DNA of 64,000 nucleotides from Phyllobates terribilis (lineage: Eukaryota), in assembly GCF_046119375.1 (NCBI RefSeq), contig NW_027362767.1:323206001-323270000 (forward strand). Reading direction: 5' to 3'. Position numbers and translations under genes: made by a program. Shown piece after piece: positions 712 to 6,700 of the stretch (position 1 is the stretch's first letter; each line of letters opens with the position of its first letter). The notes below the pieces were generated by a model. The model searched no databases. It was given only the letters and a program-made list of their open reading frames with translations, and was not told the origin of the DNA.

Positions 712-3700
712 ATGCCGCCAGTACACCGCTCCCGGAGCCGCAGTCCGGGCTCTCCACGGAAACGGCGCCATAGCAGCAGCAGCAGTAGCGACCGCTCCCC
801 GGAGAAGAGGACGAAAAAGTCCAGATCCCGAGAACGGGTCAGCAATGGCCACCGCCGCAGCCGCTCCAGAGAGCGCGCTCCCTCCAGCCGGCCATACCAC
901 GGCAAACAGTGGGGGGACTACTACGAGAAGGGGAAGGAGGAGATGATGAGACAGCGGCAGGAGGCGTTCATAGCCCGGTAAGGAGGACACACATCCGCCA
1001 TATATATATATCCATACAAATATCCACATACAGCGGCAGGAGGCGTTCATAGCCCGGTAAGCAGGACACACATCCGCCATATATATATATCCATACAAAT
1101 ATCCACATACAGCGGCAGGAGGCGTTCATAGCCCGGTAAGGAGGGCACACATCCGCCATATATATATATCCATACAAATATCCACATACAGCGGCAGGAG
1201 GCGTTCATAGCCCGGTAAGGAGGACACACATCCGCCATATATATATCCATACAAATATCCACATACAGCGGCAGGAGGCGTTCATAGCCCGGTAAGGAGG
1301 ACACACATCCGCCATATATATATCCATACAAATATCCACATACAGCGGCAGGAGGCGTTCATAGCCCGGTAAGGAGGACACACATCCGCCATATATATAT
1401 CCATACAAATATCCACATACAGTGGCGGGAGGCGTTCATAGCCCGGTAAGGAGGACACACATCCGCCATATATATATCCATACAAATATCCACATTCAGC
1501 GGCAGGAGGCGTTCATAGCCCGGTAAGGAGGACACACATCCGCCATATATATAGCCATACAAATATCCTCATACAGTGGCAGGAGGCGTTCATAGCCCGG
1601 TAAGGAGGACACACATACGCCATATATATATCCATACAAATATCCACATACAGCGGCAGGAGGCGTTCATAGCCCGGTAAGGAGGACACACATCCGCCAT
1701 ATATATATCCATACAAATATCCACATACAGCGGCAGGAGGCGTTCATAGCCCGGTAAGGAGGACACACATCCGCCATATATATATCCATACAAATATCCT
1801 CATACAGCGGCAGGAGGCGTTCATAGCCCGGTAAGGAGGACACACATCCGCCATATATATATCCATACAAATATCCACATACAGCGGCAGGAGGCGTTCA
1901 TAGCCCGGTAAGGAGGGCACACATCCGCCATATATATATCCATACAAATATCCACATACAGCGGCAGGAGGCGTTCATAGCCCGGTAAGGAGGGCACACA
2001 TCCGCCATATATATATCCATACAAATATCCACATACAGCGGCAGGAGGCGTTCATAGCCCGGTAAGGAGGACACACATCCGCCATATATATATCCATACA
2101 AATATCCACATACAGCGGCAGGAGGCGTTCATAGCCCGGTAAGGAGGACACACATCCGCCATATATATATATCCATACAAATATCCACATACAGCGGCAG
2201 GAGGCGTTCATAGCCCGGTAAGGAGGGCACACATCCGCCATATATATATATCCATACAAATATCCACATACAGCGGCAGGAGGCGTTCATAGCCCGGTAA
2301 GGAGGACACACATCCGCCATATATATATCCATACAAATATCCACATACAGCGGCAGGAGGCGTTCATAGCCCGGTAAGGAGGACACACATCCGCCATATA
2401 TATATATCCATACAAATATCCACATACAGCGGCAGGAGGCGTTCATAGCCCGGTAAGGAGGACACACATCCGCCATATATATATCCATACAAATATCCAC
2501 ATACAGTGGCGGGAGGCGTTCATAGCCCGGTAAGGAGGGCACACATCCGCCATATATATATATCCATACAAATATCCACATACAGCGGCAGGAGGCGTTC
2601 ATAGCCCGGTAAGGAGGGCACACATCCGCCATATATATATCCATACAAATATCCTCATACAGCGGCAGGAGGCGTTCATAGCCCGGTAAGGAGGACACAC
2701 ATACGCCATATATATAGCCATACAAATATCCTCATACAGCGGCAGGAGGCGTTCATAGCCCGGTAAGGAGGACACACATCCGCCATATATATATATCCAT
2801 ACAAATATCCTCATACAGCGGCAGGAGGCGTTCATAGCCCAGTAAGGAGGGCACACATCCGCCATATATATATATCCATACAAATATCCACATACAGCGG
2901 CAGGAGGCGTTCATAGCCCGGTAAGGAGGACACACATCCGCCATATATATATCCATACAAATATCCACATACAGCGGCAGGAGGCGTTCATAGCCCGGTA
3001 AGGAGGACACACATCCGCCATATATATATCCATACAAATATCCACATACAGTGGCGGGAGGCGTTCATAGCCCGGTAAGGAGGGCACACATCCGCCATAT
3101 ATATATATCCATACAAATATCCACATACAGCGGCAGGAGGCGTTCATAGCCCGGTAAGGAGGGCACACATCCGCCATATATATATATCCATACAAATATC
3201 CTCATACAGCGGCAGGAGGCGTTCATAGCCCGGTAAGGAGGACACACATCCGCCATATATATATCCATACAAATATCCTCATACAGCGGCAGGAGGCGTT
3301 CATAGCCCGGTAAGGAGGGCACACATCCGCCATATATATATATCCATACAAATATCCACATACAGCGGCAGGAGGCGTTCATAGCCCGGTAAGGAGGACA
3401 CACATCCGCCATATATATATCCATACAAATATCCTCATACAGCGGCAGGAGGCGTTCATAGCCCGGTAAGGAGGACACACATCTGCCATATATATATATC
3501 CATGCAAATATCCACATACAGCGGCAGGAGGCGTTCATAGCCCGGTAAGGAGGACACACATCCGCCATATATATATCCATACAAATATCCTCATACAGCG
3601 GCAGGAGGCGTTCATAGCCCAGTAAGGAGGACACACATCTGCCATATATATATCCATACAAATATCCACATACAGCGGCAGGAGGCGTTCATAGCCCGGT

Positions 3701-6700
3701 AAGGAGGACACACATCCGCCATATATATATCCATACAAATATCCACATACAGCGGCAGGAGGCGTTCATAGCCCGGTAAGGAGGACACACATCTGCCATA
3801 TATATATCCATACAAATATCCACATACAGCGGCAGGAGGCGTTCATAGCCCGGTAAGGAGGACACACATCCGCCATATATATATCCATACAAATATCCAC
3901 ATACAGCGGCAGGAGGCGTTCATAGCCCGGTAAGGAGGACAAATATCCACATACAGCGGCAGGAGGCGTTCATAGCCCGGTAAGGAGGGCACACATCCGC
4001 CATATATATATATCCATACAAATATCCACATACAGCGGCAGGAGGCGTTCATAGCCCGGTAAGGAGGACACACATCCGCCATATATATATCCATACAAAT
4101 ATCCACATACAGTGGCGGGAGCCGTTCATAGCCCGGTAAGGAGGGCACACATCCGCCATATATATATCCATACAAATATCCACATACAGCGGCAGGAGGC
4201 GTTCATAGCCCGGTAAGGAGGACACACATCCGCCATATATATATCCATACAAATATCCACATACAGTGGCAGGAGGCGTTCATAGCCCGGTAAGGAGGAC
4301 ACACATCTGCCATATATATATCCATACAAATATCCACATACAGCGGCAGGAGGCGTTCATAGCCCGGTAAGGAGGACACACATCTGCCATATATATAGCC
4401 ATACAAATATCCACATACAGTGGCAGGAGGCGTTCATAGCCCGGTAAGGAGGACACACATCTGCCATATATATATCCATACAAATATCCACATACAGCGG
4501 CAGGAGGCGTTCATAGCCCGGTAAGGAGGACACACATCTGCCATATATATATCCATACAAATATCCACATACAGCGGCAGGAGGCGTTCATAGCCCGGTA
4601 AGGAGGACACACATCCGCCATATATATATCCATACAAATATCCACATACAGCGGCAGGAGGCGTTCATAGCCCGGTAAGGAGGACACACATCCGCCATAT
4701 ATATATCCATACAAATATCCACATACAGTGGCAGGAGGCGTTCATAGCCCGGTAAGGAGGGCACACATCCGCCATATATATAGCCATACAAATATCCACA
4801 TACAGTGGCAGGAGGCGTTCATAGCCCGGTAAGGAGGACACACATATGCCATATATATATCCATACAAATATCCACATACAGCGGCAGGAGGCGTTCATA
4901 GCCCGGTAAGGAGGACACACATCCGCCATATATATATCCATACAAATATCCACATACAGCGGCAGGAGGCGTTCATAGCCCGGTAAGGAGGACACACATC
5001 CGCCATATATATATCCATACAAATATCCACATACAGCGGCAGGAGGCGTTCATAGCCCGGTAAGGAGGACACACATCCGCCATATATATATCCATACAAA
5101 TATCCACATACAGCGGCAGGAGGCGTTCATAGCCTGGTAAGGAGGACACACATCCGCCATATATATATCCATACAAATATCCACATACAGCGGCAGGAGG
5201 CGTTCATAGCCCGGTAAGGAGGACACACATCCGCCATATATATATCCATACAAATATCCTCATACAGCGGCAGGAGGCGTTCATAGCCCGGTAAGGAGGA
5301 CACACATCCGCCATATATATATATCCATACAAATATCCTCATACAGCGGCAGGAGGCGTTCATAGCCCGGTAAGGAGGACACACATCCGCCATATATATA
5401 TCCATACAAATATCCTCATACAGCGGCAGGAGGCGTTCATAGCCCGGTAAGGAGGACACACATCTGCCATATATATATCCATACAAATATCCACATACAG
5501 CGGCAGGAGGCGTTCATAGCCCGGTAAGGAGGACACACATCCGCCATATATATATCCATACAAATATCCACATACAGCGGCAGGAGGCGTTCATAGCCCG
5601 GTAAGGAGGACACACATCCGCCATATATATATCCATACAAATATCCACATACAGCGGCAGGAGGCGTTCATAGCCCGGTAAGGAGGACACACATCCGCTG
5701 TGTGGTGGTTAGGACATTAATCATTTGCAAGTTTTTTTTTTGTCTTATGGTATTTGTTGATGTTTTTTTCACCAAATTCTTCAAATTTGGACACACAATT
5801 CATGAATTTTGGCACAAAGTCCCAAAAAAAATTTTATTTTTTGTTTCTAACCCTGTTTGCTACTTCTTAGCTTAAACAAAAAAAAGTTTTACATTCTACT
5901 AAAATGTCACAATAATTGGTCCAAATTTTAGGTGTACATAAAATCACTCGGGAGTGCGGGAGACCAAAGTACATGTGCACAAAAGTTTGCAACTTTTTAA
6001 AAAGTCAGTTGATCAATAAACTAAAAATATCTGGAAAACCCGAACTCTGCCGAAACGGTGAACATAAAAAATAATTAAACATATATAAAATAGACTTCAA
6101 AAAAGGATCAAATTAAAAAAAGGATGAGGCGCAAATGAAAGAATGAAACAGGACTTAACTGTTTGTGGTATAACAATGAGCATTAGCTTGTAAGACTTAA
6201 GCCACTGCCCCAATATCAGTATTCGGTCAGTATTTGGTCAGTATTCGGTCAGTATTTTTTCTCAGGAGTTGGAGCCAAAACCAGGTGAGGAACAATCAGA
6301 GAAAAGGTATAATAGAAACAAGTCACCAATTCTGCATTTATCACCCACTCCTGGTTTTGGCTCCCACTCCTGAGAAAAAATACTGACCAAATACTGATAG
6401 TGGGGCCGTGGCCTAAGTCTGCTCCTGTGAGAAGATGGGCCTTTGCATTAAAACCACCTGCCTGATCTTCTGCATCTCGCCATTGTGCTGCCAGAACAGC
6501 GGTAACCTGAAGAAACATGGATGTCACAAGATGTCGGTTGATGGCACAAACATGTCCTTACTAGGGTCTCTAGGCTTGTGATATTAATGAATTATCCTAG
6601 AGCCGGTGATCAGTATGAGATCCAGCTATCAGTATTCATTATTAGCACAGGCCAAGTGTAAACCTCAAACAGAATAGCAATCCATATCCGCCGCTGAACC

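What the first reader, a model, noticed from the sequence alone, without database searches (positions are those of the whole stretch)
951..5698. NKAP exon-1 donor amplified about 62-fold; every distal donor yields a premature stop
Seen: the unit is the last 26 coding nt of exon 1 plus CG|GTAAGG and about 45 nt of intron. The GTAAG core looks intact in the copies I inspected, including the 50-bp deletion unit at about 3904-3954. Read-through of the first donor gives CGG TAA (stop at 979-981), so splicing from any later donor to exon 2 makes a PTC-containing mRNA. Established: such transcripts are NMD substrates, and NKAP is a spliceosome-associated factor. Inference: the spliceosome must pick the first of about 62 equivalent donors across 4.7 kb, which could act as a tunable unproductive-splicing valve or a U1 sponge. 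Core invariance is weak evidence of selection because overall divergence is low.
Basis: partly seen in the sequence, partly recalled or inferred. Interest (0 to 1): 0.85.

Follow-up and report, generated by a model that had tools for sequence, protein, structure and literature searches.

The report
Splice-donor minisatellite in frog NKAP intron
A 4.7-kb tandem repeat has copied the end of the first exon of the NKAP gene and its splice signal 62 times, but the RNA data show the cell using the first copy, so it looks like a tolerated, length-variable repeat and not a regulatory device.

Summary
Window 951-5698 is a 77/79-bp minisatellite of 62 units. Each unit holds the last 27 nt of NKAP exon 1, the donor CCG|GTAAGG and about 45 nt of intron. 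All 62 GTAAG cores are intact. Splicing from any of the 61 distal donors would keep the in-frame TAA at 979-981.

The regulatory reading ("unproductive-splicing valve", "U1 sponge") is not supported.
- **RNA:** in two RNA runs the only exon 1-exon 2 junction contig carries unique exon-1 sequence (921-950), then the 27 nt, then exon 2 (7058). That is the first donor.
- **Array RNA:** array-only RNA has about 0.25-1% of the mRNA word depth, summed over all copies.
- **Selection:** donor positions are no less variable than the rest of the unit (3 of 9 against 10 of 68 polymorphic columns). Most changes are CpG transitions.
- **Copy number:** word-depth ratios suggest about 35-65 copies in the source animal and about 11 in another individual.

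The closest precedent is the human F7 intron-7 VNTR, where 5-9 identical donors exist and only the most upstream is used. The scan has noted similar donor minisatellites at other loci of this genome (NDUFA1 in this window; ALAD, HTRA2, UAP1L1, DPH7, MLH3 and others elsewhere). That points to a genome-wide mutational process, not NKAP-specific control. I class it as a new, very large member of a known kind.

The parts
644..977 (+). NKAP exon 1 (ATG at 712; the 5' end is at or upstream of 644)
   Evidence: Translation gives an RS-rich NKAP N-terminus. The X15 mRNA contig (620 nt) has 334 nt upstream of exon 2. Exon 1 plus exon 2 reads through in frame into [19 protein letters not shown].
951..5698 (+). 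Minisatellite of 62 units of 77/79 bp. Each unit has 27 nt of exon 1, the donor GTAAGG and about 45 nt of intron. The layout is (A+B)x61 + A, with A = 48 nt and B = 29-31 nt.
   Evidence: TRF; unit alignment; 1.3% variant cells.
975..983 (+). Authentic, used 5' splice site CCG|GTAAGG (cut at 977|978)
   Evidence: The RNA junction contigs carry unique exon-1 letters 921-950, then the 27 nt, then exon 2.
979..981 (+). In-frame TAA, retained by any transcript spliced from a distal donor
1054..5683 (+). 61 pseudo-donors. 57 are identical to the first over -3..+6. The variants are u2 (+6 G>C), u25 and u35 (-1 G>A) and u55 (-2 C>T).
3903..3952 (+). 50-bp unit, carrying a 27-bp internal deletion between two ACA triplets; its donor is intact
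5699..7057 (+). Unique remainder of intron 1
   Evidence: RNA contig depth is zero in the non-repeat bins of this part of the intron; the only signal falls in bins where multi-copy sequence piles up.
6193..6420 (.). Very high-copy fold-back (MITE-like) element inside intron 1
   Evidence: Inverted arms of 43 and 53 nt. DNA word depth reaches about 2.8 million against 8.4 for unique DNA.
7058..7138 (+). NKAP exon 2
   Evidence: GT..AG joint into 7058 and a loose end behind 7138 that continues into exon 3. Exon 3 starts at 8579 after a CAG acceptor.

Best explanation
This is a young, or continually homogenised, copy-number-variable minisatellite. It began as a local duplication across the NKAP exon 1/intron 1 boundary and then expanded by slippage or unequal exchange. 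It is tolerated because the splicing machinery uses only the most upstream donor, the one attached to real exon 1. That donor is cap-proximal and lies directly downstream of an 82%-purine, GAR-rich exon segment. The other 61 identical donors then simply become part of intron 1. Occasional errors would carry the TAA at 979-981 and be removed by nonsense-mediated decay. Shown here: the anatomy, first-donor use in the dominant mRNA, the lack of extra conservation at donors, the rough copy-number difference, and the recurrence at other genes. Inferred: the mode of origin, the reason for first-donor preference (cap-binding complex and exonic enhancer, or oriented 5'-to-3' scanning as proposed for F7), and neutrality.
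For: Anatomy. RNA: in X9 and X15 a single GT..AG joint enters 7058 at depth 2617 and 2265. Only 19-26 letters lie on the array side, followed by a loose end that reads the letters of window 921-950, which occur once in the window. No contig joins intronic unit sequence to exon 2. The array-only 107-nt contig has depth 28.1 (X9) and 5.72 (X15). No selection signal: the invariant GTAAG core is expected by chance (P about 0.37-0.58), and the -3..+6 donor has 3 of 9 polymorphic columns against 10 of 68 elsewhere. The variants at columns 5, 26, 27 and 46 are CpG transitions, including those that weaken donors. Copy number: array over unique depth is about 35-65 in X3 and about 11 in X7. Recurrence: the NDUFA1 exon-1 donor is amplified 15 times at 49243-50292, and a kb-scale array starts about 70 nt after the UPF3B-like exon-1 donor. 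Scan notes record further donor arrays in this genome. Precedent: the F7 IVS7 VNTR, where only the most upstream donor is used (PMC1557585).
Against: All RNA evidence comes from assembled contigs, which drop rare variants, and word depth is a poor measure of expression. NMD would hide distal-donor products at steady state, so the true leak rate is unknown. The array words are held by runs labelled as two other species, so the array is not brand new and could be maintained. A cis effect of 61 U1-binding sites, or of 230 CpGs (observed/expected 0.85), on transcription was not tested. The copy-number estimates rest on summed contig depths, which the tool itself warns are not copy numbers.
Confidence: 0.75

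Rival explanations
1. Regulated unproductive splicing. A variable share of transcripts is spliced from distal donors, acquires the stop at 979-981 and is destroyed by NMD, so the array tunes NKAP output.
For: All 61 distal donors are strong and yield a premature stop. NMD would hide the products. The array words occur in RNA runs, including one (X15) that otherwise held only exon 2 of the 6900-7300 stretch.
Against: Only the first-donor junction is assembled in two RNA runs. Array RNA depth is 0.25-1% of the mRNA depth summed over 62 copies, which is about 0.09-0.45 per copy and fits trace pre-mRNA or DNA. Donors show no excess conservation. Copy number differs about five-fold between individuals. 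The same architecture is found at unrelated genes.
Confidence: 0.07
2. Copy-number-dependent cis effect without distal splicing. The 61 U1-binding sites and the CpG-rich 4.7 kb just downstream of the promoter alter transcription, elongation or premature polyadenylation, so the repeat acts as an expression VNTR.
For: The array lies within 0.3-5 kb of the start of the gene and has CpG observed/expected of 0.85, against 0.47 in the rest of intron 1. It contains no AATAAA or ATTAAA. From general knowledge, promoter-proximal 5' splice sites and U1 binding are known to stimulate transcription and suppress premature cleavage.
Against: There is no direct evidence here. Most unit variants are CpG transitions, which suggests germline methylation and decay rather than a protected CpG island. 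The large copy-number difference between individuals argues against tight constraint.
Confidence: 0.13
3. Assembly artefact: the copy number, or the array itself, was created by mis-assembly of long reads.
For: Long tandem arrays are error-prone in assemblies.
Against: Contigs of another run from the same likely source sample give about 35-65 times the unique depth on the array. The unit-to-unit words are found in at least eight other DNA and RNA samples and in two other species labels. The 3' boundary contig at 5669-6236 is present in X3.
Confidence: 0.03

Closest known systems
Human F7 intron-7 37-bp VNTR with 5' pseudo-sites (Borensztajn et al. 2006, PMC1557585)
   Same: It is a minisatellite whose first unit spans the exon-intron boundary. 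The authentic donor is followed by donors of identical sequence, only the most upstream one is used, and copy number is polymorphic.
   Different: Here there are 62 copies over 4.7 kb instead of 5-9 copies. The exon is the first, cap-proximal exon and not an internal one. Every distal donor gives a stop, whereas in F7 some pseudo-sites keep the frame. The pseudo-donors have not been tested functionally by mutagenesis. This array is one of many such arrays in the same genome.
NMD-coupled unproductive splicing (poison exons and alternative 5' sites in splicing-factor genes)
   Same: Alternative donor use would create a premature stop upstream of many exon junctions, in a gene for a spliceosome-associated protein.
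   Different: Known cases are strongly conserved and their PTC isoforms are readily detected. Here the element is copy-number variable, shows no extra conservation and has no assembled PTC isoform.
Ordinary intronic minisatellites (VNTRs) seeded from local sequence
   Same: The units are short and locally derived, identity is high with shared variants in non-adjacent units, there are unit-length variants, and copy number is polymorphic. The same window holds five other arrays of this class.
   Different: The seed segment happened to include a functional 5' splice site and 27 coding bases.

Membership tests
Exon-intron-junction VNTR with silent pseudo-donors (F7 IVS7 type) | A tandem minisatellite whose first unit spans the exon-intron boundary | tested here: met
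   The array starts at 951, 27 nt before the donor at 977|978.
Exon-intron-junction VNTR with silent pseudo-donors (F7 IVS7 type) | [quoted passage not shown] | tested here: met
   57 of the 61 distal 9-mers (-3..+6) are identical to the first donor, and all 62 GTAAG cores are intact.
Exon-intron-junction VNTR with silent pseudo-donors (F7 IVS7 type) | Only the most upstream donor is used in normal mRNA | tested here: met
   The junction contigs in X9 and X15 carry unique exon-1 letters 921-950 before the 27 nt and exon 2. No distal junction contig was seen. Minor use cannot be excluded from contigs.
Exon-intron-junction VNTR with silent pseudo-donors (F7 IVS7 type) | Copy number is polymorphic in the population | tested here: inconclusive
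   The ratio of array depth to unique depth is about 35-65 in X3 and about 11 in X7. This is suggestive, but contig depths are only a rough proxy.
Exon-intron-junction VNTR with silent pseudo-donors (F7 IVS7 type) | The pseudo-donors become active when the upstream donor is inactivated | not testable with these tools
   This needs minigene mutagenesis.
NMD-coupled regulated unproductive splicing | A PTC-containing isoform is detectable | tested here: inconclusive
Contigs drop rare variants and no NMD block was available.
NMD-coupled regulated unproductive splicing | The alternative splice element is under purifying selection or conserved | tested here: not met
   Donor columns are as polymorphic as the others and copy number varies. 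The array words are, however, present in two other species labels.
U1 sponge / 5'-splice-site-rich retained RNA | The decoy-bearing RNA is abundant relative to its target | tested here: not met
   Array RNA word depth is 5.7-28, against 2265-2617 for NKAP mRNA itself. From general knowledge, U1 snRNP is present at very high copy number per cell.

The most novel reading that the evidence does not exclude
The NKAP array is one product of a frog-lineage process that seeds minisatellites preferentially at the promoter-proximal start of first introns and often captures the first 5' splice site. One speculative cause is promoter-directed meiotic breaks in a lineage without PRDM9. The resulting ladders of decoy donors would then leak, in proportion to copy number, into NMD-targeted transcripts, so that array length becomes a heritable dial on expression of essential genes such as NKAP.
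Probability: 0.1. Interest if true: 0.75.

Novelty: new member of a known kind. Interest (0 to 1): 0.4.

Why it matters
It is a natural experiment on 5' splice-site choice. Sixty-one donors of the same strength lie closer to the acceptor than the real one, yet the dominant mRNA uses the first. This extends the F7 observation from 5-9 copies to 62 copies, to 4.7 kb and to a first exon. Copy number seems to vary between animals, and the same genome carries many such arrays. Together they offer a ready-made allelic series for testing scanning, cap-proximity and exon-definition models of donor choice, and for measuring how much splicing error NMD absorbs. For annotation, it warns that gene predictors may pick a wrong donor in such arrays.

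Tried and rejected
- **Protein searches.** The 89-aa exon-1 protein was meant to reach NKAP of related species and hence their intron 1. The word-indexed search found nothing at E <= 0.001 and the exhaustive phmmer search found nothing. The likely reasons are that the segment is RS-rich and low in complexity, and that full-length NKAP lies outside the length band of the first tool. I therefore could not compare any orthologous locus.
- **RNA structure.** In a fold of 712-1500 the first donor is not more accessible than later ones (mean unpaired probability 0.34, against 0.35-0.73 for the next six). I rejected structure as the reason for first-donor choice.
- **Known RNA families.** Rfam at gathering thresholds on 1-9000, both strands, gave no match.
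- **Coding potential.** The minus-strand ORFs across the array (198 aa) are periodic translations of the repeat and not genes.
- **Read layout.** I used 5574-7200 and read the exon-1 identity from the loose-end letters.
- **Literature.** The draft genome paper for the golden poison frog does not mention tandem repeats or introns. A search for amphibian first-intron minisatellites gave nothing relevant.
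Full report
**What is there**

TRF reports a single array at window 951-5698 with period 77, 61.6 copies and 91-93% matches. Anchoring on the exon-derived part gives 62 units:
- 45 spacings of 77 bp
- 15 spacings of 79 bp, with one extra AT in the AT run
- one 50-bp unit at 3903-3952, which carries a 27-bp deletion between two ACA triplets
- a truncated final unit of 48 nt at 5651-5698

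Each unit has three parts: the last 27 nt of NKAP exon 1 (951-977), the donor G|GTAAGG, and about 45 nt of intron. The array has the form (A+B)x61 + A, with A = 48 nt and B = 29-31 nt. It therefore begins and ends with the exon-plus-donor part. This fits an initial 48-nt duplication with filler between the copies, but that origin is inference.

**Gene context**

- The exon 1 ORF starts at ATG 712 and encodes an RS-rich NKAP N-terminus.
- Exon 1 joined to exon 2 (7058-7138) reads in frame into [19 protein letters not shown].
- The conserved C-terminal NKAP motifs lie at about 14.9 kb and 16.6 kb on the same strand.
- Read-through of the first donor gives CGG TAA at 976-981.
- For all 61 distal donors, exon 1 through that donor plus exon 2 stops at codon 90.

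**Is it real?**

Contigs of a further run from the likely source sample (X3) give a summed word depth of 545 and 287 on the two array bins. The unique flanks have a depth of 7.6-8.4. The ratio is about 35-65 fold, compatible with the 62 assembled copies. All seven sampled 31-mers of three consensus units are held by several DNA samples of the same species, by at least eight RNA or unclassified runs, and by runs labelled as two other species. About 39% of a unit's 31-mers cross the unit-to-unit joint, so those runs must carry at least a tandem duplicate. I reject assembly artefact.

**Which donor is used?**

I laid two RNA runs and two DNA runs on 5574-7200, which covers the last 1.6 units, the unique intron and exon 2.

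- Both RNA runs show one GT..AG joint from the end of a unit's 27-nt exon part into 7058. Its depth is 2617 in X9 and 2265 in X15.
- Only 19-26 letters lie on the array side of that joint.
- The contig then leaves the stretch with loose-end letters ...GGAGGAGATGATGAG in X9, and 30 letters in X15 that equal window 921-950.
- Those 30 letters occur once in the window, directly upstream of the first unit.

The aligner placed the 27 nt on the last unit only because the first unit was not in the stretch. The molecule is exon 1, first donor (977|978), exon 2, and it continues into exon 3 at 8579. No contig joins intronic unit sequence to exon 2.

**How much array RNA is there?**

- The array-only RNA contig is the 107-nt closed cycle of the repeat. 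Its depth is 28.1 in X9 and 5.72 in X15, about 1% and 0.25% of the mRNA contig depth.
- That figure is summed over all copies. Per copy it is 0.09-0.45.
- This explains why the non-repeat bins of the unique intron have zero depth, and it fits trace pre-mRNA or DNA.
- If mature transcripts used random distal donors and retained about 30 units each, their steady-state share would be below about 1e-4 to 4e-4.

Three caveats apply. These are contigs, word depth is a poor expression measure, and NMD would remove such products.

**Selection on donors**

Across the 60 full units, 1.3% of cells differ from the consensus.

| Columns | Polymorphic | Note |
|---|---|---|
| GTAAG core | 0 of 5 | expected by chance, P about 0.37-0.58 |
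| Donor -3..+6 | 3 of 9 | Fisher p = 0.17 against the rest, in the direction of more variation |
| Rest of unit | 10 of 68 | |

Two units have -1 G>A, one has -2 C>T and one has +6 G>C. About a third of the variant cells are CpG transitions (columns 5, 26, 27 and 46), including those that weaken donors. This looks like neutral decay of methylated DNA. Variants shared by non-adjacent units, and the higher TRF scores at periods 154 and 231, indicate multi-unit exchanges.

**Copy-number variation**

In another individual (X7) the array contig has depth 124, against 10.7-11.3 for unique DNA. That is about 11 copies per haploid genome on average, compared with about 35-65 in the source animal. The estimate is rough, but it points to a typical VNTR.

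**Why the first donor?**

All donors share the same 27 nt upstream, so what distinguishes the first lies further upstream or in its position.
- The 40 nt before the first unit are 82% purine and GAR-rich, like an exonic enhancer. Every later unit has 42% purine and 3% G there.
- The first donor is the cap-proximal one, at least 334 nt from the 5' end.
- Predicted accessibility does not favour it.

From established knowledge, the cap-binding complex promotes U1 recruitment to the cap-proximal 5' splice site and SR proteins bound to purine-rich exon sequence favour the adjacent donor. The F7 study showed experimentally that, among tandem identical donors, the most upstream is selected by an oriented process, even against pseudo-sites of higher U1 complementarity (PMC1557585). 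The acceptor is transcribed 1.4-6 kb after the donors, so all 62 are available when pairing occurs. A simple proximity rule would predict use of the last donor, which is not observed. That mismatch is the interesting aspect of the locus.

**Context in the genome**

- The same window holds a 70-bp x 15.0 array at 49243-50292. It is made of the last 36 nt of NDUFA1 exon 1 (minus strand), its GTGAGT donor and 28 nt of intron.
- A 34-bp x 75 array begins about 70 nt after the exon-1 donor of a UPF3B-like gene, whose ATG is at 51072.
- By my rough estimate, about 0.03 array ends would fall within 100 nt on the intron side of one of three exon-1 donors in 64 kb by chance. Three are observed.
- Notes of this scan list further donor minisatellites in the same genome: ALAD, HTRA2, UAP1L1, DPH7, MLH3, L3HYPDH, BSPRY, ROGDI, FKBP15 and MAP3K2. 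I did not check these.
- Earlier follow-ups name the genome as the golden poison frog. I did not verify this either.

This recurrence favours a mutational explanation: abundant, locally seeded minisatellites, perhaps concentrated near promoters. Copies that include a donor survive because first-donor choice makes them harmless. A link to promoter-directed recombination in PRDM9-less amphibians (PMC5519329) is speculation.

**Verdict**

The premature-stop logic is correct. The valve and sponge function is unsupported, and I give it about 7%. A copy-number-dependent cis effect on expression remains possible, at about 13%. The best reading, at about 75%, is a tolerated and polymorphic junction VNTR of the F7 IVS7 kind. 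It is far larger than the F7 case, sits on a first exon, and is one of many in this genome.

Noticed in passing
window 49243-50292 (minus-strand gene): A 70-bp x 15.0 array is made of the last 36 nt of NDUFA1 exon 1, its GTGAGT donor and 28 nt of intron. Read-through also meets a stop. It has the same architecture as the NKAP array but an unrelated sequence.
   Followed up: partly
window 51072-56228: A UPF3B-like gene (ATG 51072, exon-1 donor at about 51177) lies head-to-head with NDUFA1. It has kb-scale 34/35-bp (TG)n-containing arrays starting about 70 nt into intron 1 (51258-53957 and 55127-56185). So all three housekeeping genes in the window carry a large array at the start of intron 1.
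   Followed up: partly
window 6193-6420 (and a similar copy near 13270-13520): A fold-back MITE-like element with 43- and 53-nt inverted arms. DNA word depth reaches about 2.8 million against about 8 for unique sequence, which implies an extremely high copy number. It is also very abundant in RNA contigs.
   Followed up: partly
window 28518-29534 (-), 36700-37404 (+), 41427-42449 (+): Three Tc1/mariner-type transposase ORFs of 338, 234 and 340 aa. Two appear full length.
   Followed up: no
window 31357-32564 and 34491-34928: Two further minisatellites (30 bp x 40 and 56 bp x 7.8). With the others, tandem arrays cover about 18% of this 64-kb window.
   Followed up: no
runs X25, X27, X28: Runs labelled as two other species hold all sampled 31-mers of the NKAP array, so at least a tandem copy of the unit is shared beyond this species label. 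The kind of library is unknown.
   Followed up: no
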